From positions 124,001-188,000 of IMG/VR virus record IMGVR_UViG_3300032288_004964: a stretch of DNA of 64,000 nucleotides; one strand, written 5' to 3'. The position numbers and the translations under genes were made by a program. This document shows, piece by piece, positions 2,642 to 24,977 of the stretch (position 1 is its first letter; each line of letters starts with the position of its first letter). The notes beneath the pieces were generated by a model, which had not been told where the DNA came from, ran no database searches, and worked only from the letters and a program-made list of their open reading frames with translations.

Positions 2642-3451
2642 ATGAGATTAAAAGAATCATTAAAAGATTTAATAGTAAATTCCGTTTTATATACAATTAC
2701 TTTAATTAGAAGCCTTTTTGGTAAAATGGAAAAGAGTAACTCTAATATTACTTCTAAAATGGAGTTAATATTTGAGGATAATTTTCAATCATTTAATAAA
2801 GATGTTTGGAGAATTGGTCAACCTTGGGGTAAATTTCATCCAGGTTCTCCTTATCAATATTATGGAGATGAATCTGTTTTTATACAAAATGACTGTTTGG
2901 TATTAAATCAGATATATTCACCTAAACAATTAACTACTTGGGAAGATCCTAAAGTATATGATATACCTTACTCTGTTGGATTGATAACATCATATGAAAG
3001 TTATGGATATGGATTTTATGAATTTGAAGTAGAACTACCTTATGGTTCTGGATTATGGCCAGCAGTTTGGTTAAGTTGTGTTGATTCATGGCCTCCTGAA
3101 ATAGATATTATAGAAGCTTACTCTGATAATAAAGCTAATTATAAGAATAACTTACAATCAAATTTTCATTTCAATATGGAAGACAAAAAGGAGTCTTCTG
3201 GTGCTAGAAATCATCCAGTTAATGTTCCATATGATAAATTGAAATTGGGTTGCTGGTGGACTAAGGATTTCATTAAAATCTACTATAATGGACATCTAGT
3301 TAGACAAATTACATCTGATTATATTTTAAAATGGTTTAGAGATAAGAAAATGTTAATTATATTAAACAATGCTATTAGACCAGAATATACTAAGGATATA
3401 GAATCTCAAATTTCAGAATTTAGGATTTATAGTGTAAAAGTATGGAAGTAA
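2642..3451 (+). CDS. Glycoside hydrolase family 16 (laminarinase/beta-glucanase-like)
   Basis: GLWPAVW and WPPEIDIIE (ExDxxE catalytic motif); FEDNF and YGFYE segments. Confidence 0.85.
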   Translation: MRLKESLKDLIVNSVLYTITLIRSLFGKMEKSNSNITSKMELIFEDNFQSFNKDVWRIGQPWGKFHPGSPYQYYGDESVFIQNDCLVLNQIYSPKQLTTWEDPKVYDIPYSVGLITSYESYGYGFYEFEVELPYGSGLWPAVWLSCVDSWPPEIDIIEAYSDNKANYKNNLQSNFHFNMEDKKESSGARNHPVNVPYDKLKLGCWWTKDFIKIYYNGHLVRQITSDYILKWFRDKKMLIILNNAIRPEYTKDIESQISEFRIYSVKVWK

Positions 3452-3714
3452 TCATTGGAAGAAAATCAGATAGTTTGATTGAACAAGGTTATGTTTATGC
3501 TCCTTATATTCCAATTCAAACATCATCTGTTGTAAATGGATATGATTCTAAAAATACAAATAGAAAAAGAAAGATTAATAAGATATTTGGCTTAGGTTTA
3601 AATATTAAAGATGAATTCTTACCAAGTAAATCAATTACAAGTAGATACTCAACAAAGAATATAAATAGTAAATATTACGGAACTATAGAAATTAAAAACA
3701 CCACTCAAATTTGA
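3442..3714 (+). CDS. Small protein resembling the C-terminal segment of T4-like major capsid protein gp23, with an insertion
   Basis: GRK...EQGYVYAPYIP...F.P...ITSRY...YYG matches the gp23 C-terminal pattern GYKG..E.DAG.YYAPY...F.P....TRY (recalled from memory). Confidence 0.65.
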   Translation: MEVIIGRKSDSLIEQGYVYAPYIPIQTSSVVNGYDSKNTNRKRKINKIFGLGLNIKDEFLPSKSITSRYSTKNINSKYYGTIEIKNTTQI

Positions 3715-3744: not shown

Positions 3745-4083
3745 TTATCTAATATATCCTGTTTTTTCTTCACCAGTTTTAAAGTTATAACAAGTTATTG
3801 AATCATGACCTGGTACAACAATAACATCACCAAATACAAATGGATTCATTATATCATATTCAAAAATAGCAACTTCAATTTTACCGTCTTTTACAATAAG
3901 TACAAACTCTCTACCTTCTTCATCAAATCCTTCTTTTAATTCAGAACCATCTGGTAATTTACTCAAATTTCTTCCAATTTCTATTTCACCTTCTATTTCA
4001 TCTGCTGTTAATGATCCTACTAATTTGAATCCTAAATCATCACCAGATTCCATGTCTTCGTTAAATTTTCTTAAGTGTTTCAT
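3745..4083 (-). CDS. Hypothetical protein with CTS-like N-terminus
   Basis: Starts MKHLRKFNED. Confidence 0.7.
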   Translation of the reverse strand: MKHLRKFNEDMESGDDLGFKLVGSLTADEIEGEIEIGRNLSKLPDGSELKEGFDEEGREFVLIVKDGKIEVAIFEYDIMNPFVFGDVIVVPGHDSITCYNFKTGEEKTGYIR

Positions 4084-4113: not shown

Positions 4114-4392
4114 TTATTTCAAATCACTAAGACTCATAATCATTTTTTTAGCTTTTTCGGAAAGACCATTTAAATATTGGTCAACATCTTGAATACTATT
4201 CACATCAGGATATCCATTTAAATCCATTTGCAAATTATCAAATGTAAACTCACCACTTAAACCTCCTTTTTTTAATCCATGTGCAAGTCCTCTATAATAA
4301 GCTTGTTCTATTAAATCGGAAATGTTTTTAATAGTTCTTTCTTCAGCTCTTACGAAGTTAATATCTTCATTGAATTTCTTTAAGTGTTTCAT
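4114..4392 (-). CDS. Hypothetical protein with CTS-like N-terminus
   Basis: Starts MKHLKKFNED. Confidence 0.7.
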   Translation of the reverse strand: MKHLKKFNEDINFVRAEERTIKNISDLIEQAYYRGLAHGLKKGGLSGEFTFDNLQMDLNGYPDVNSIQDVDQYLNGLSEKAKKMIMSLSDLK

Positions 4393-18776: not shown

Positions 18777-20063
18777 TTAAAATTTGTGTGGGAAAATATG
18801 TCTCCATTCATGTCCTTGTGGGACATCTTTAGCTTTAACGCCGAATATCTTTTTTTCTGGACAAGTGTCTTTACCATCCATTAAGAAGTTATTATTACAA
18901 GCCCAAACTTCAGCAGTTCTATTTAGAATTTGACCAACTGAGAAAGGGAATCTCATTCCTGTTTCATTTTCAATATTGGTAATTCTACCGTCAGGATTCT
19001 TTTTAACAGTAATTATTAATCTTGGATTTCTTTTATTAGTGAATACTACTTCTCTTTCATATATAGATTCTTTAATTGGTTCATCACCTATTAAATCAGC
19101 CGCTTTATTCATATTAATTTTAATATTTTCAATTCTTTTAGCTTCTTTATCATTTTCATATACTGATTTAACTAACTCAGATAATTCTTTAAGTATTTTG
19201 GCACTAGCTTTACAATTTTCAGGATCACCCTCACAAATTACTTCTAATTTATAAAACTCTCCACTGTTATACTTACATAGGTTTTTACTTAGTAAAAAAT
19301 CCTGTGATCTGGTGTCAAATCCATTTGGTTTAGTAACACACCATATTCTTATAGGAGTGTCATCAAAATCAACTTTAAATTTATCTATTTGATGACTATT
19401 ATTTCCATATATAGCATATCCGTCATCATTTCTTGTAGTAGATTTTTCTATCTTATAAGGTGAGATACCTTTTACTTTTTTTAAACGAGCTATATACTCT
19501 AAGGCAATTTTATCATCTTCAGTTAATTTCTTAGAAAGGAAGTCAAAAAGACCTTCTTCTAATAAATCAGCAGCTGGGTTTATTTCAGTTTGAATTCTTT
19601 CAATTCTTTTTCTTTCTTTATCCTCTTTATAGATTTTGTCTATTAGATGAAATAGTTTTATGCGATAAGATTCTTTAGATCTAATTCTTTCACACAAACC
19701 AGTGTCATTTCCAATAAATAATTTCCATTTATTTACACATTTTTCTTCTTTTACAAACTCGCCAGTTATGGTGTTTACTAAGTTATGTCTATCATTTGAT
19801 ATAAGCAAATCAACATCATCAAATCTAACAACATATATTACACTGTAATATTCTGATTTAACTCTATTTTCAGTAGTATCTGCGGCATTTTGCATCCAAG
19901 CAGGTAACCTCATATCTTCACTCATTATATCATGAATTTCATATGGATTTTTATCTTTAACTTTTTCAAGACGATGTGTCATATCCAATGTGATTTTATC
20001 ATCATTGGTATCTTTCTTAAAATAATCTAAGAAACCTTCATCATATCTTTTTAAGTGTTTCAT
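18777..20063 (-). CDS. CTS-tagged multidomain protein with internal tandem duplication
   Basis: Start moved to MKHLKRYDEG; EG(F/L)..(Y/F)...DDKI.L...RL.KVK...PY...AADL occurs twice. Confidence 0.7.
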   Translation of the reverse strand: MKHLKRYDEGFLDYFKKDTNDDKITLDMTHRLEKVKDKNPYEIHDIMSEDMRLPAWMQNAADTTENRVKSEYYSVIYVVRFDDVDLLISNDRHNLVNTITGEFVKEEKCVNKWKLFIGNDTGLCERIRSKESYRIKLFHLIDKIYKEDKERKRIERIQTEINPAADLLEEGLFDFLSKKLTEDDKIALEYIARLKKVKGISPYKIEKSTTRNDDGYAIYGNNSHQIDKFKVDFDDTPIRIWCVTKPNGFDTRSQDFLLSKNLCKYNSGEFYKLEVICEGDPENCKASAKILKELSELVKSVYENDKEAKRIENIKINMNKAADLIGDEPIKESIYEREVVFTNKRNPRLIITVKKNPDGRITNIENETGMRFPFSVGQILNRTAEVWACNNNFLMDGKDTCPEKKIFGVKAKDVPQGHEWRHIFPHKF

Positions 20064-20080
20064 TAAACTATATATTATTT

Positions 20081-20953
20081 TTAGAAACAAGAAAGATATC
20101 TTTCACCTCTATCACATAATATAGTTATGATATTTCCTTCCATTTCTGGATATTTTTCTAACAATCTTTCTGATGCTAAGATATTAGCACCTGAGCTAAT
20201 TCCTACAAATAAACCTTGTTCTTTAGCTAATCTTATAGCTCTTTCTTTAGCATCCTCAGTTGAGATAACCATAATATCATCAACTTCTTTTAGATCAACT
20301 AAGAATTTAGAACCATCACCAATCCCTTGAATACCATGAAGTCCTGGTTGACCACCTGACATAACTGGCGATTCCGCTGGTTCAACTGCTACAACTTTCA
20401 TTTCGTGATTATACATCTTTAAAACACGAGAAGTGCCCATAAGAGTTCCTCCAGTTCCTGTTCCATCTACAAAAGCCGCAATTCTTCCTTTACTTTGGTG
20501 TAAGATTTCAACACCTGTTCCTTTTTCATGAGCTTCTATGTTTAGTGGGTTATGAAATTGATTAGGGTTAAAGTATCCATTTTCATAAGCCATTTTATCT
20601 CTTAAAGCAATAGCATCATCAAATTTACCATCTGGTACTTCAATTAGTTCAGCACCATAAAGTCTTAACATTTGTTTTCTTTCTTCGCTCATATTAGAAG
20701 GCATAATGATTATACATTTATATCCTCTTTCAGCTGCTATGAAAGCAAATGCGATTCCAGAGTTTCCAGATGTTGCTTCAATAATTGTATCACCTTTTTT
20801 AATAAGGTTATTCTTTTCAGCGTCATTTATTATATAAGATGCCATTCTGTCCTTTATTGAACCACTTGGGTTTTGACCTTCAAACTTTGCGAATATTCTT
20901 TCAGAGATTTTTATAAGTGGTGTTTGACCAACTACAGAGGATAATTTTTCCAT
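20081..20953 (-). CDS. cysK: Cysteine synthase (O-acetylserine sulfhydrylase)
   Basis: NPSGSIKDR (PLP lysine); EATSGNSG; GTGGT; HGIQGIG; GISSGAN; DRGERYLS. Confidence 0.92.
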   Translation of the reverse strand: MEKLSSVVGQTPLIKISERIFAKFEGQNPSGSIKDRMASYIINDAEKNNLIKKGDTIIEATSGNSGIAFAFIAAERGYKCIIIMPSNMSEERKQMLRLYGAELIEVPDGKFDDAIALRDKMAYENGYFNPNQFHNPLNIEAHEKGTGVEILHQSKGRIAAFVDGTGTGGTLMGTSRVLKMYNHEMKVVAVEPAESPVMSGGQPGLHGIQGIGDGSKFLVDLKEVDDIMVISTEDAKERAIRLAKEQGLFVGISSGANILASERLLEKYPEMEGNIITILCDRGERYLSCF

Positions 20954-21061: not shown

Positions 21062-21892
21062 ATGAAATGGACAGACGAAGAAATTGAAATTTTAAAAAAC
21101 AACTATGAACAAGGTGCTAATTATCTGACTTCTTTATTAGAAAGAGATAGATCTTCTATACAACATAAATTAAATAGATTGAGACTCTTTGTATCTAAAG
21201 AAACAAAGTCAAAGATATCAAAAGTGAATTCATCTAAAAGAAAATTTGATGATTCATTTTATTCAGTTTGTGATATAACAAAAAATATTAATGAATACTC
21301 AGCTTATATTTTAGGATTCCTATGGACTGATGGATTTCTTCTGAAAAATAGAAAAACTACAGGTATTACAATTATTAAAGATGATATGATTGAGATAAAT
21401 TGGATATTTAACAAGTTTGGAACTTGGTATTCTCAAGATAGAGTTAGAAAGAATAAAAGAGAGTCTAGTACCTTAACCGCATATAATCCATATCTATTAG
21501 ATAGTTTAATTTCATATGACTTTGATAAAAAATCATATATATCTCCTGAAAAGTTATTTAGTTTAATACCACAAAAGTATTTAAAATATCTAATTAGAGG
21601 TATAATAGATGGTGATGGTTGCTTCTATCTGAATACAAAGAGATATACCTATCAATTAACTATTGCTTCTACATATGAACAGGATTGGTCATTTTATATA
21701 GACTTTTTTAATAAATTAGGATTTGAATTTAAAATACAAAAGAGAATAAATAAAAAAAGTAAATCTTCTATAATAAGATTATGTCAACGCCAAAAGATAT
21801 CTGATCTTTCTAAGTGGTTATATGATGGGTATGAGTTTGATAAAATTGGACTCTCAAGAAAATACAACAAATCTATTTTATTTGATAAATAA
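21062..21892 (+). CDS. Free-standing LAGLIDADG endonuclease
   Basis: AYILGFLWTDG and YLIRGIIDGDG; N-terminal WTDEE HTH-like segment. Confidence 0.85.
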   Translation: MKWTDEEIEILKNNYEQGANYLTSLLERDRSSIQHKLNRLRLFVSKETKSKISKVNSSKRKFDDSFYSVCDITKNINEYSAYILGFLWTDGFLLKNRKTTGITIIKDDMIEINWIFNKFGTWYSQDRVRKNKRESSTLTAYNPYLLDSLISYDFDKKSYISPEKLFSLIPQKYLKYLIRGIIDGDGCFYLNTKRYTYQLTIASTYEQDWSFYIDFFNKLGFEFKIQKRINKKSKSSIIRLCQRQKISDLSKWLYDGYEFDKIGLSRKYNKSILFDK

Positions 21893-21910: not shown

Positions 21911-22516
21911 ATGAATATATGGTTTACATCAGACACACATTTTGGACACACTAACATTGCTGGTCCTAAAATTTCTAATTGGTCTTCAGGATACAGAAAC
22001 TTTAACTCTGTACATGAAATGAATATGACACTTGTTGATGGTATCAACAAATATGTTAAAGAAGATGATATACTTTATCATCTTGGTGATTGGAGCTTTG
22101 GAGGATCTCAAAATATATTTCAATTCAGAAATTATCTTATATGTAAGAATATACACTTGATTTTAGGCAACCATGATCAACATATAGTTGATAAAGAGAT
22201 AAACTATCATGATACATCATTTAATCCAGTTGAACTTTTCTCATCTGTTCAAGATGTTCTAACTTTAGATATTGGTAAAACAAAACTATTTTTATCACAT
22301 TATTCACATAGAGTTTGGTTGGGTAGTCATAAGGGTGTTATACATCTTTATGGCCACTCACACGGATCTATTCCCGATTATGGAAAATCTATGGATGTTG
22401 GTGTTGATGTTGCTTTTAAGAAGTTTGGAGAATATAGACCTTTTAATATTGGCGACATCACTAATATTATGTCAAAGAGAAGTATAGAGAAAATTGATCA
22501 CCACGGAGATATGTAG
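21911..22516 (+). CDS. Calcineurin-like metallophosphoesterase
   Basis: SDTH, LGD, GNHD, SHY, GHSH. Confidence 0.9.
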   Translation: MNIWFTSDTHFGHTNIAGPKISNWSSGYRNFNSVHEMNMTLVDGINKYVKEDDILYHLGDWSFGGSQNIFQFRNYLICKNIHLILGNHDQHIVDKEINYHDTSFNPVELFSSVQDVLTLDIGKTKLFLSHYSHRVWLGSHKGVIHLYGHSHGSIPDYGKSMDVGVDVAFKKFGEYRPFNIGDITNIMSKRSIEKIDHHGDM

Positions 22517-22517
22517 T

Positions 22518-22682
22518 ATGAGAAAATTAGAATCTGAATTATCCTATTATAAAGTTTTAATTAATTCTCAGTATGGTACAAATACCAGTACAACAATGTT
22601 AGATAAAGCCTATCAACTAAGAAGAAAAATTATCACTGTAAAAAATAGAAAAAATAAAATTAAAAAGATATTTAATATATGA
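22518..22682 (+). CDS. Small protein containing family-B DNA polymerase motif B plus R-tag
   Basis: KVLINSQYG (KxxxNSxYG); C-terminal NRKNKIKKIF; start moved to ATG 22518. Confidence 0.55.
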   Translation: MRKLESELSYYKVLINSQYGTNTSTTMLDKAYQLRRKIITVKNRKNKIKKIFNI

Positions 22683-23008
22683 TAGATAGATGGGATTGTC
22701 AAAGAGTTGTTTGTATAAAAGAATATAAAACTCTTAAAATAGGTAGTCATTATGATATTAAGGGTAGAGGTAATTTAGAATTTAATGCTGATAAAGAAGT
22801 TGGTGATAAAAGAGGATATGGATATTGTGTAGAAGATGGTCTCTATGGTTCCTACTCTGGTAAAAAAGATTGGTGGAAATTACCATATGCTGAGAAAGTT
22901 AAGTGGTATTATTTTACTGAGGAAGAAATGTCTGAATATTTTATAACAGAAGAAGAAGATTATAAAGTATATTTAAGAGACGAAAAACTAAAACAATTGC
23001 TTAATTAA
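22679..23008 (+). CDS. Hypothetical protein with C-terminal R-tag
   Basis: Ends LRDEKLKQLLN. Confidence 0.7.
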   Translation: MIDRWDCQRVVCIKEYKTLKIGSHYDIKGRGNLEFNADKEVGDKRGYGYCVEDGLYGSYSGKKDWWKLPYAEKVKWYYFTEEEMSEYFITEEEDYKVYLRDEKLKQLLN

Positions 23009-23009
23009 C

Positions 23010-23882
23010 ATGAAAGATATAAAAGGATTTTGTAAATTATTTGATTTAAGTATTCCCGAACATGATGAGTTTGATTATTATATCAATCAATTTGTTCGGT
23101 TAGAAAAGTTTAAACATATTAAAGATATGATTCCTCTCTATGAGAAAGCTGAAGAGGAATTTGGTGATATTTTTGCCTTAAAAATTGAAAAGTCTAATCA
23201 GATTGTTCAATTTTTACAATCAACTCGTGCCTTAAATGAGTTAAATGATGATAATTTAATACCTGATCTTCCTACTACAAAGAGCTTTCAATATTCAGAA
23301 GATAAAAAATATATCTCTATTGATATGAGAATGGCTAATTGGCAAGTTCTTAAAAAGTATGATCCTCACTTTGAGAATGAGTTAGGAGATAGTTATATTG
23401 AACTACTTAAAAAGTTTGATGTACCTGAGGTATTTTGGAATTCTAAGCAATTTAGACAATATATCTTTGGTAATATTAATCCTAAGCGACAAGGAAAAGC
23501 TCAAAGAGTAATGATTCAAGAAATACTTGATAAGTATAGTCATTTGAATTTAGAAGTAGCTTGTATTAAGAATGATGAGGTTATTTACTCATTTGACTCA
23601 TTTGATGATATTATTCAAATTATAAATGAAATAGATAGTAAAAGGTTTAAGATTAAACTTTTCACAGTAAAAAGAGTACAAGATTTTCGAATTAATTCTT
23701 ATATGGATGAAAGTGGAAACTTTCTATATAAAGAAATGATTGGATGTAACGGAAATTCATTCTTCTTATTACTTAAACAGTATATTTTTAATGAACCTTT
23801 AGACATAAGAGACCTTTATTTTAGGATGGATGGTAATTTAGCCATTTGGAAAGTAGATGGTCTAAAATTAGAACTAAAATGA
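23010..23882 (+). CDS. Hypothetical protein, possibly polymerase-palm-like
   Basis: ISIDMRMAN and IKNDE acidic motifs; functional call weak. Confidence 0.45.
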   Translation: MKDIKGFCKLFDLSIPEHDEFDYYINQFVRLEKFKHIKDMIPLYEKAEEEFGDIFALKIEKSNQIVQFLQSTRALNELNDDNLIPDLPTTKSFQYSEDKKYISIDMRMANWQVLKKYDPHFENELGDSYIELLKKFDVPEVFWNSKQFRQYIFGNINPKRQGKAQRVMIQEILDKYSHLNLEVACIKNDEVIYSFDSFDDIIQIINEIDSKRFKIKLFTVKRVQDFRINSYMDESGNFLYKEMIGCNGNSFFLLLKQYIFNEPLDIRDLYFRMDGNLAIWKVDGLKLELK

Positions 23883-24506: not shown

Positions 24507-24977
24507 ATGACAAAGATGATTTTAACATCAGAAGGTAAAAAGAAGCTATTAGAAGAACTACACTTTTTATCAACAACAGAAAAAACAAGAATGATAAATG
24601 AACTTGCTGATGCTAGAGATAGAGGTGGTGTTTCTGAAAACTCAGAGTATGAAATTGCTAAAGATGAATATCAAAAACTACAAGTTAAAATAGTTAATTT
24701 AGAGGAAAAAATTGCCAATTCGGTTTTGATTAGCACTGCCGGTATTGATACTGAACAAGTTTCTGTTTTATCAACTGTAAAAGTTCTTAATAAGAAAACT
24801 AATACCGAAGTTAAATTCACAATAGTTACTGAAACAGAGATTGATATTAAAGCTGGTAAAATATCCTTAAATAGTCCTATTGCGGTTGGACTGTTAGGAA
24901 AAAAAGTAGGTGAAACTGCAAAAGTTGTTATCCCTGCTGGAACACTTGAGTTTGAAATTTTAGAAATAACTGCGTAA
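24507..24977 (+). CDS. greA: Transcription elongation factor GreA-like
   Basis: LT.EG..KL.EEL; ARDRGGVSENSEY; ISL.SPIA.GLLGKKVG...P.G. Confidence 0.9.
   Translation: MTKMILTSEGKKKLLEELHFLSTTEKTRMINELADARDRGGVSENSEYEIAKDEYQKLQVKIVNLEEKIANSVLISTAGIDTEQVSVLSTVKVLNKKTNTEVKFTIVTETEIDIKAGKISLNSPIAVGLLGKKVGETAKVVIPAGTLEFEILEITA

What the first reader, a model, noticed from the sequence alone, without database searches (positions are those of the whole stretch)
22518..22682. 54-aa peptide carrying the PolB fingers motif KxxxNSxYG
KVLINSQYG closely matches motif B of T4-type gp43 (KILINSLYG). The ORF is only a helical hairpin ending in NRKNKIKKIF, and no other polymerase motifs are adjacent. It could mimic the fingers helix.
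Basis: partly seen in the sequence, partly recalled or inferred. Interest (0 to 1): 0.65.

Follow-up and report, generated by a model that had tools for sequence, protein, structure and literature searches.

The report
Small phage protein with polymerase-like motif
A real, conserved 54-residue protein of a huge freshwater phage carries the signature of the DNA-polymerase "fingers" helix, but it is a free-standing two-helix mini-protein with a reusable basic tail, not a missing piece of the polymerase, and its function is still unknown.

Summary
The ORF (22518..22682, +) exists as described. It belongs to an unannotated family of at least 140 protein clusters, all 36-75 aa. Of 147 members, 125 keep K-x3-N-S/T-x-Y/F-G. 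The invariant Ser switches between the TCN and AGC codon families, so selection acts on the protein. AlphaFold2 gives a confident helical hairpin.

The ORF 23010..23882 folds as a family-B polymerase palm. That pairing is not obligatory.

The peptide is not a split-polymerase exon. A related complete 635-kb genome that carries the small ORF has a family-B polymerase split at the finger tip, and its C-terminal subunit has its own motif B.

Similarity to polymerase helix P is local and weak (hhalign P 6.5e-4, HMM 6.8 bits on T4 gp43 motif B, no database-level hit). The same strict pattern also occurs in a mini-ORF derived from the major capsid protein.

The C-terminal RKxKIxxIF tail is a module. 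It ends 16 otherwise unrelated mini-ORFs in the related genome (about 1 expected), and it sits inside a capsid-protein-fragment ORF in this window (3442..3714).

Best reading: a basic "head plus tail" binding mini-protein. Polymerase mimicry is possible but unproven.

The parts
22518..22682 (+). Small ORF, 54 aa, pI 10.3, two-helix hairpin. Member of an unannotated phage family of 36-75 aa proteins.
22551..22577 (+). Head motif K12-V-L-I-N16-S17-Q-Y19-G20 at the C-terminal end of helix 1 and the turn. Same pattern as family-B polymerase motif B.
22647..22673 (+). Tail motif R44-K-N-K-I-K-K-I-F52 at the end of helix 2, which is longer than helix 1 so the tail probably projects beyond it (inferred). 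The tail is a module shared with other mini-ORFs.
21911..22516 (+). Metallophosphoesterase. It lies immediately upstream in every close relative, with its stop 1 nt before the small ORF start or overlapping it.
22679..23008 (+). 109-aa ORF whose ATG overlaps the small ORF's TGA (ATGA). No family hit. Ends in a related tail (LRDEKLKQLLN). Present or absent between relatives.
23010..23882 (+). 290-aa family-B-polymerase-like palm plus short fingers protein (mini-PolB). Invariant D105, K146...Q150..F153-G154, D189-E190. Directly follows the small ORF in some relatives.
21062..21892 (+). LAGLIDADG-type homing endonuclease gene between cysK and the phosphoesterase. Absent at this place in several relatives.
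3442..3714 (+). Second mini-ORF of the same style. It is a free-standing copy of the C-terminal ~60 aa of the Gp23-type major capsid protein, with an inserted RKRKINKIF segment (3562..3588).

Best explanation
The ORF is a genuine gene of a huge freshwater phage with T4-type core genes. It encodes a very basic (net charge about +10) two-helix hairpin that acts by binding, not by catalysis. It is not a subunit-forming piece of the replicative polymerase. It is built from two parts. The head is helix 1, which ends in the invariant LKxx(I/L)NSxYG cap. K12, N16 and Y19 are spaced i, i+4, i+7 and so fall on one face, away from the L4/L8/L11/L15 seam that packs on helix 2. The tail is RKxKIKxIF, the last turns of the longer helix 2, which project beyond helix 1. 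This tail is a reusable handle that these phages attach to many different short heads. I infer that the tail docks the protein on a common polyanionic or hub partner (nucleic acid, ribosome or a shared protein). I infer that the K/N/Y face gives specificity. The likeliest specific target is a surface that normally meets polymerase helix P, for example the C-terminal helix N of the N-terminal subunit of the split polymerase. Shown: the gene is real and under protein-level selection, it forms a hairpin, it is always free-standing, the tail is modular, and the related genome's polymerase has its own motif B. Inferred: the binding mode, the partner, and any effect on replication.
For: The family is real and always small. 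One search found 79 homologues at E<0.01. One search returned 73 significant representatives of 36-71 aa and no long protein. Protein-level selection is shown by Ser codons from both codon families and by synonymous K, N, Y, G and R changes. The hairpin has pLDDT 89. pI is 10.3, with 13 K+R against 3 D+E. The ORF is not the missing fingers. The complete relative LR745206.1 carries the small ORF. It also carries a split family-B polymerase: a 513-aa N-terminal subunit with DFASLYP and a 474-aa C-terminal subunit that starts 33 aa before its own KLVLNGSYG and has YGDTDS. Pfam PF00136 covers profile positions 21-151 and 138 onwards in the two subunits. The tail is a module. The strict tail pattern is C-terminal in 16 small ORFs of LR745206.1 against 0.98 expected, with a maximum of 4 in 100 shuffles, and the flanking DNA is not shared between copies. 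The heads of other tail-bearing ORFs are pieces of core proteins. These include a Gp23 C-terminus (window 3442..3714, Pfam Gp23 positions 303-376, E 3.4e-5) and a PolB motif-A string that is 10/11 identical to the genome's own polymerase, next to an RNR-like string. Local likeness to helix P: hhalign P 6.5e-4 in register, against controls of 0.29 and 0.18. The HMM's best hit in T4 gp43 lies on motif B.
Against: No partner has been identified. The one complex prediction allowed, with the 290-aa neighbour, gave no verdict. No expression data exist: all runs that hold the DNA are DNA metagenomes. The NSxYG end could be no more than a helix C-cap and turn. T4 gp43 itself has a second LLNSMYG outside motif B, and a capsid-derived mini-ORF matches the strict pattern. 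The tail could be explained by codon bias in a 28% GC genome, although its position at C-termini and its codon variation argue against that.
Confidence: 0.55

Rival explanations
1. Helix-P mimic derived from the polymerase gene. The head would be a diverged copy of the 5' end of the gene for the C-terminal polymerase subunit. The peptide would compete with, or chaperone, that subunit for the exposed C-terminal helix of the N-terminal subunit, and so tune assembly of the split polymerase.
For: The pattern is exact and conserved. The clade's polymerase is split at the finger tip, so helix P is the free N-terminus of a separate protein. hhalign gives P 6.5e-4 with K, N and YG in register and a 7-residue (two-turn) gap. 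The HMM's best match in T4 gp43 is motif B. Other mini-ORFs demonstrably copy pieces of core genes. Split family-B polymerases do reassemble from two polypeptides (PMC2988022, PMC13648687, PMC3061061).
Against: The similarity is far below database significance. The clade's own subunit has NGSYG, not NSxYG. Helix order and turn position differ from a fingers hairpin. No complex test with the polymerase subunits could be run.
Confidence: 0.2
2. Trans-acting fingers for the neighbouring 290-aa mini-PolB. The peptide would supply canonical K/N/Y residues to a palm protein whose own motif B is degenerate (K..xQY.FG).
For: The 290-aa protein is a family-B palm look-alike: Foldseek hits on Pol alpha at E 2e-4, VIA Z 8.2 on KOD residues 380-607, and Atlas PolB clusters at TM 0.53-0.61. 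It lies one gene away in the window and directly adjacent in L005/L006.
Against: LR745206.1 has the small ORF but no 290-aa homologue by tblastn. LR756502.1 has the 290-aa gene with no small ORF upstream. Distant 290-aa homologues in Salicola phage SCTP-2 and MT835533.1 have no such neighbour. Distant small-ORF members have no 290-aa gene within 6 kb. The 290-aa protein keeps its own invariant K146/G154 helix.
Confidence: 0.07
3. Chance resemblance. The head motif would be only a helix cap and turn of a small nucleic-acid- or membrane-binding protein with no relation, by descent or by function, to polymerases.
For: The hairpin matches only generic hairpins such as ExoVII small subunit, ClpC M-domain and Skp. 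The strict pattern also appears in a capsid-derived ORF, and LLNSMYG occurs elsewhere in T4 gp43. A related 'N-(N/S)-x-Y-G, short linker, tail' arrangement recurs in other mini-ORFs.
Against: K12 one turn upstream is kept in more than 90% of members. There is the targeted hhalign and HMM signal. The genomic setting is rich in polymerase fragments and split polymerases.
Confidence: 0.15
4. Untranslated ORF, or a DNA- or RNA-level element that merely reads as a peptide.
For: No RNA or protein data exist. The genome is AT-rich, so K/N/I-rich ORFs arise easily.
Against: The reading frame stays open with the same architecture in more than 140 clusters at 30-50% identity. The invariant Ser uses TCN and AGC codons. 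Start and stop are coupled to neighbours (ATGA). The tails do not share flanking DNA.
Confidence: 0.03

Closest known systems
Motif B (K-x3-N-S-x-Y-G) on helix P of the fingers of family-B DNA polymerases, e.g. T4 gp43 residues 557-565
   Same: Identical fixed residues and spacing, hydrophobic residues between K and N, and the motif at the C-terminal end of a helix of a helical hairpin.
   Different: No motif A or C, no palm, 54 aa in all. The motif lies on the first helix and is followed directly by the turn. Similarity is not significant at database scale.
Split family-B polymerases: gene 43A/43B of Aeromonas phages 25 and 44RR (PMC2988022), PhiKZ DNAP-N/DNAP-C (PMC13648687), engineered finger-tip split of Pfu polymerase (PMC3061061)
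   Same: The phage clade that carries the small ORF has a polymerase split into two polypeptides at the finger tip. A separately encoded helix-P-like peptide recalls a third fragment.
   Different: Both halves of the polymerase are complete without the peptide, because motif B is on the C-terminal subunit. The known splits give two large subunits, never a 54-aa one.
C-terminal amphipathic membrane-targeting helices of MinD or FtsA (B. subtilis MinD end ...AKIKSFFG, read from a primer in PMC13537761)
   Same: C-terminal position, K-I-K-x-(I/F)-F-(G/N) pattern, amphipathic spacing.
   Different: The tail is far more polar (mean Eisenberg hydrophobicity -0.6 against +0.37). Membrane binding is untested and doubtful.
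Uncharacterised small early proteins of T4-type phages that act by binding or mimicry (own knowledge, not tested here)
   Same: Small size, location in runs of short co-directional overlapping genes, fast evolution with a few fixed residues.
   Different: No homology to any named one. PHROGs and Pfam give nothing.

Membership tests
Family-B DNA polymerase (Pfam PF00136) | Motif B K-x3-N-S-x-Y-G | tested here: met
   KVLINSQYG at residues 12-20. Conserved in 125 of 147 family members.
Family-B DNA polymerase (Pfam PF00136) | Motifs A (DxxSLYPS) and C (DTDS) and a palm domain in the same polypeptide | tested here: not met
   54 aa, two helices only.
Family-B DNA polymerase (Pfam PF00136) | Significant profile similarity to the family | tested here: not met
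   No Pfam hit at E 0.01. No PDB chain at E 10. Only small proteins among 1.84 billion representatives. Targeted tests are weak: 6.8 bits on T4 motif B and hhalign P 6.5e-4.
Subunit of a split family-B polymerase | The other subunits lack the part that the candidate supplies | tested here: not met
   In LR745206.1 the C-terminal subunit has KLVLNGSYG and YGDTDS, and the N-terminal subunit has DFASLYP. Tested in a relative, not in the window's own genome, whose polymerase lies outside the window.
Subunit of a split family-B polymerase | Physical association with the polymerase | not testable with these tools
Head-plus-RKxKIxxIF-tail mini-ORFs of huge phages (class proposed here) | Tail motif within about 12 residues of the C-terminus of an ORF under about 90 aa | tested here: met
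   R44..F52 of 54. 16 such ORFs in LR745206.1 against 0.98 expected.
Head-plus-RKxKIxxIF-tail mini-ORFs of huge phages (class proposed here) | Head derived from a segment of a core phage protein | tested here: inconclusive
   Clear for the Gp23-fragment ORFs and for the motif-A string. Only suggestive for this ORF.
MinD/FtsA-type membrane-targeting sequence | Hydrophobic face wide enough to insert into a membrane | tested here: not met
   Mean hydrophobicity -0.6 against +0.37 for the MinD helix. This is a calculation only.

The most novel reading that the evidence does not exclude
Huge T4-type phages may keep a repertoire of 'bait-and-handle' mini-proteins. Each would be a short copy of a signature segment of one of their own essential proteins (polymerase helix P, polymerase motif A, the Gp23 capsid C-terminus, an RNR loop) joined to a common RKxKIxxIF handle. 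They could act as decoys for host immune sensors that recognise conserved phage proteins, as poisons for competing phages' homologous machines, or as assembly regulators. The ORF in question would be the polymerase-fingers bait.
Probability: 0.15. Interest if true: 0.85.

Novelty: new variant of a known kind. Interest (0 to 1): 0.5.

Why it matters
If the head really imitates polymerase helix P, this would be a first example of a phage-encoded peptide built from a polymerase active-site helix. It would also give a handle on how split family-B polymerases assemble or are controlled. Independently of that, the shared RKxKIxxIF tail defines a testable class of mini-proteins in the largest known phages, whose thousands of small ORFs are otherwise unreadable. 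If the resemblance is chance, the value is cautionary. A five-residue catalytic motif can be perfectly conserved in a protein that has nothing to do with catalysis, and the same pattern arises here from a capsid protein.

Tried and rejected
- **Complex prediction.** Complex prediction of the small family with the 290-aa family scored 0.00. This is no verdict and is not evidence either way.
- **Fold search of the hairpin against PDB.** Nothing below E 3, only generic hairpins.
- **tblastn of the peptide against 50,697 phage records.** No match, not even to the LR745206.1 homologue, so that blank is uninformative.
- **ESM Atlas feature search of the peptide.** No usable hit.
- **The search for related loci with the family alignment in IMG/VR.** Only one locus.
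- **Relatives of the motif-A/RNR chimeric mini-ORF in IMG/VR.** None found, so that ORF may be a lineage-specific accident.
- **hhalign of the small family against the 290-aa family.** P 0.29, so the peptide is not a duplicate of that protein's own motif-B helix.
- **Idea that the tail is the end of a mobile DNA element.** Rejected, because the flanks of the 16 tails share nothing beyond the 27 nt.
- **Idea that the tail is a MinD-like membrane anchor.** Weakened, because the tail is too polar.
- **Idea that the homing endonuclease gene is tied to the small ORF.** Not supported. The endonuclease is present or absent independently and sits beside the phosphoesterase.
- **GC-rich hairpin insertions of the kind seen in relatives' polymerase genes.** None in the window and none found in LR745206.1.
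- **Expression.** No RNA run holds the region. DNA contigs only showed a recombination joint at 22494.

Full report
**What the window is.** The window has 28% GC and no tRNA genes. It encodes tail-fibre-like proteins, a UvsX/RecA homologue, GreA, a NUDIX protein, cysteine synthase and many proteins with no family. Its nearest GenBank relatives are two uncultured phage genomes of 642 and 635 kb, LR756502.1 and LR745206.1. The window is part of IMG/VR contig IMGVR_UViG_3300032288_004964 (385,333 bp), at roughly 124-188 kb. The DNA recurs in freshwater, lake, groundwater and plankton metagenomes.

**The observation.** An ATG at 22518 opens a 54-codon frame that ends with TGA at 22680-22682. The frame holds KVLINSQYG at residues 12-20 and ends NRKNKIKKIFNI. 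The upstream phosphoesterase gene stops at 22516. The next ORF starts with the ATG that overlaps the TGA. The strict pattern is expected 0.057 times in the shuffled window. One occurrence alone would therefore not mean much.

**It is a real gene family.**
- A sequence search gave 7 close homologues.
- A profile search gave 79 homologues at E<0.01.
- An exhaustive HMM search of 1.84 billion representatives gave 73 significant proteins, all 36-71 aa. None was a long protein and none was a polymerase.
- In a 72-member alignment N16, Y19, R44, K45, K47 and I48 are invariant. M1, L4, L8, K12, S17, G20, K42, K49 and F52 are kept in at least 90%.
- K-x3-N-(S/T)-x-(Y/F)-G is strict in 125 of 147 members.
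- At the DNA level the invariant Ser is TCT, TCA, TCG or AGC in different genomes. K, N, Y, G, R, I and F also vary synonymously. This shows selection on the protein.
- AlphaFold2 with the family alignment gives helices 2-17 and 24-51 at mean pLDDT 89.4.
- The protein has pI 10.3.
- Pfam, PHROGs, PDB sequences and the ESM Atlas give nothing.

**Neighbourhood.** In close relatives the gene order is phosphoesterase, small ORF, an optional 109-aa ORF, an optional 290-aa ORF, a DprA-like protein, an optional GreA, then a 131-aa protein. A LAGLIDADG endonuclease gene (21062..21892) lies before the phosphoesterase in the window and in L003/L004. It is absent at that place in L002, L005 and L007. More distant family members sit in runs of short, co-directional, overlapping genes with other neighbours. 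One locus has a tandem paralogue whose motif has decayed.

**The 290-aa neighbour is polymerase-like.**
- The family is highly conserved: 468 hits, with the best 120 at 65-93% identity.
- It has invariant YxSxD105...ANW, S-K146-Q-x-R-Q-x-I-F-G154-N and K-x-D189-E190.
- Its model (pLDDT 86.5) matches family-B polymerases. Foldseek finds Pol alpha at E 2e-4 and probability 1.0.
- VIA-align gives Z 8.2 on KOD polymerase residues 380-607, which are the palm and fingers. All 50 top rows are family-B enzymes.
- Atlas PolB clusters match at TM 0.53-0.61.
- Its closest structural relatives are uncharacterised proteins of giant eukaryotic viruses, some annotated as R3H-domain proteins and one as a DEDDy exonuclease.

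The two genes are nevertheless not an obligate pair:
- LR745206.1 has the small ORF but no 290-aa homologue.
- LR756502.1 has the 290-aa gene with no small ORF before it.
- Distant 290-aa homologues lack such a neighbour.
- The one complex prediction gave no verdict.

**It is not a missing polymerase exon.** I fetched all of LR745206.1 and scanned it. Its family-B polymerase is split into two genes about 100 kb apart on opposite strands.
- The first is a 513-aa protein with the exonuclease domain and motif A (DFASLYP). Pfam PF00136 covers profile positions 21-151. It ends in a long helix.
- The second is a 474-aa protein that starts 33 residues before its own motif B (KLVLNGSYG) and carries YGDTDS. 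PF00136 covers positions 138 onwards.

The split is therefore at the finger tip. This resembles genes 43A/43B of Aeromonas phages (PMC2988022) and the engineered Pfu split (PMC3061061). The enzyme is complete without the small ORF. The same genome also has a 216-aa mini-PolB with DFNSLYP, KVTVNSYW and KKRY strings.

**How polymerase-like is the head?**
- hhalign of the family against the aligned N-termini of the C-terminal polymerase subunits gives P 6.5e-4. LKxxxNxxYG is in register and there is a seven-residue gap.
- Controls give P 0.29 against the 290-aa family and P 0.18 against capsid C-termini.
- The family HMM's best match within T4 gp43 lies on motif B, at 6.8 bits.
- These are targeted, weak signals. 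The HMM did not rank the polymerase subunit within E 10 among the ORFs of LR745206.1.
- The strict pattern occurs twice in that genome. The second case (KMVNNSYYG) lies in a 75-aa ORF whose sequence is a copy of the Gp23 capsid C-terminus. Full-length capsid proteins naturally end in similar strings such as K-K-V-V-N-N-R-F-F-G.
- T4 gp43 also has LLNSMYG in its exonuclease part.

The pattern is therefore not diagnostic of polymerase origin.

**The tail is a module.**
- The pattern (R/K)(K/R)x(K/R)(I/L/V/M)x(K/R/N/Q/E/S)(I/L/V/M)(aromatic or aliphatic) occurs 18 times in the ORFs of LR745206.1. Sixteen of these lie within 12 residues of the C-terminus of ORFs of 35-83 aa. Shuffles give 0.98 on average and at most 4.
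- The DNA around these tails is unrelated, so they are not ends of a repeated element.
- One such ORF joins an RNR-like string (TIxPxGSVS) and a motif-A string (DFASLYPSTQR, 10/11 identical to the genome's own polymerase) to the tail. No relatives of that ORF were found.
- In the window itself, ORF 3442..3714 is a free-standing Gp23 C-terminus (Pfam Gp23 positions 303-376, E 3.4e-5). It shares the 11-residue string GYVYAPYIPIQ with full-length capsid proteins. It carries an inserted RKRKINKIF segment and is conserved at 67-79% identity in the clade.
- The 109-aa neighbour and many mid-size proteins end in a milder version, (I/L)RDxK(I/L)xx(I/L)(L/F).
- The tail resembles the MinD membrane anchor in pattern but is much more polar.

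**Conclusion.** The ORF is a real, selected, free-standing mini-protein of a 'head plus common tail' kind. It most likely acts by binding. Whether its head was copied from, or imitates, polymerase helix P is open. I put that at about one in three for descent and one in five for a functional effect on the split polymerase.

Noticed in passing
L028:3103-3139, L050:3103-3139, L052:3103-3139, L043:1449-1485, L055 about 3115-3150, L056:3127-3166, L059:3127-3172 (IMG/VR relatives; not in the window): Genes for the C-terminal polymerase subunit are interrupted, inside the DNA that codes motif B, by 35-46 nt inserts. Each insert has a stop codon (immediately, or one codon after the break) followed by a GC-rich hairpin (CCCCC..GGGGG). 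The inserts occupy three or four different sites within about 30 nt. At three sites the flanking codons are a synonymous pair (CTT/CTA, GCT/GCA, GTT/GTA), so a take-off/landing bypass like that of T4 gene 60 would restore the uninterrupted protein. The site after TAT has no obvious landing codon. Known gene-60-type cassettes are reported only in topoisomerase genes (bioRxiv 10.1101/2022.08.31.505936)..
   Followed up: partly
L062 and L068 (about 1.6 kb between residues ~115); L065-L067 (about 360 nt near residues 85-114): Larger insertions occur in the same polymerase gene in other relatives. They may be introns, inteins or endonuclease genes.
   Followed up: no
window 23010..23882: This 290-aa protein family has a family-B-polymerase palm fold but no exonuclease domain or thumb. 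It is conserved at 65-93% identity among the best 120 of 468 hits. Its structural relatives are in Klosneuvirus, Hyperionvirus, Pandoravirus, Medusavirus and other giant viruses. Whether it is catalytically active is unknown (motif C reads N-D-E).
   Followed up: partly
window 3442..3714: Free-standing copy of the Gp23 major-capsid-protein C-terminus with an inserted RKRKINKIF segment. It is conserved in the clade.
   Followed up: partly
LR745206.1 232803..234344 (+) and 130568..131992 (-); 597241..597891 (+): The replicative family-B polymerase is split at the finger tip into two genes about 100 kb apart on opposite strands. The genome also has a separate 216-aa mini-PolB.
   Followed up: partly
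window 21062..21892: LAGLIDADG-type homing endonuclease gene (PHROG endonuclease E 4e-20) present between cysK and the phosphoesterase here and in L003/L004. It is absent at that place in L002, L005 and L007, so this is an insertion polymorphism.
   Followed up: partly
window 22494: Contigs from three other metagenomes are nearly identical to the window from 22494 onwards but differ completely upstream. This marks a recombination joint at the boundary between the phosphoesterase and the small ORF.
   Followed up: no
window 3745..4083 (-), 4114..4392 (-), 18777..20090 (-): Several unrelated ORFs begin with nearly the same N-terminal string (MKHL(K/R)(K/R)(F/Y)(N/D)E), and similar starts occur in L001. 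Many mid-size ORFs of LR745206.1 end with (I/L)RDxK(I/L)xx(I/L)(L/F). Shared termini on otherwise different proteins are unexplained.
   Followed up: no
window 20081..20953 (-), 24507..24977 (+): The phage encodes a full-length cysteine synthase (PALP, E 5e-69) and a GreA/GreB-type transcript cleavage factor.
   Followed up: no
L008:5796-6026 and L008:6001-6216: Tandem paralogues of the small ORF (46% identical). The upstream copy has lost the NSxYG motif.
   Followed up: no
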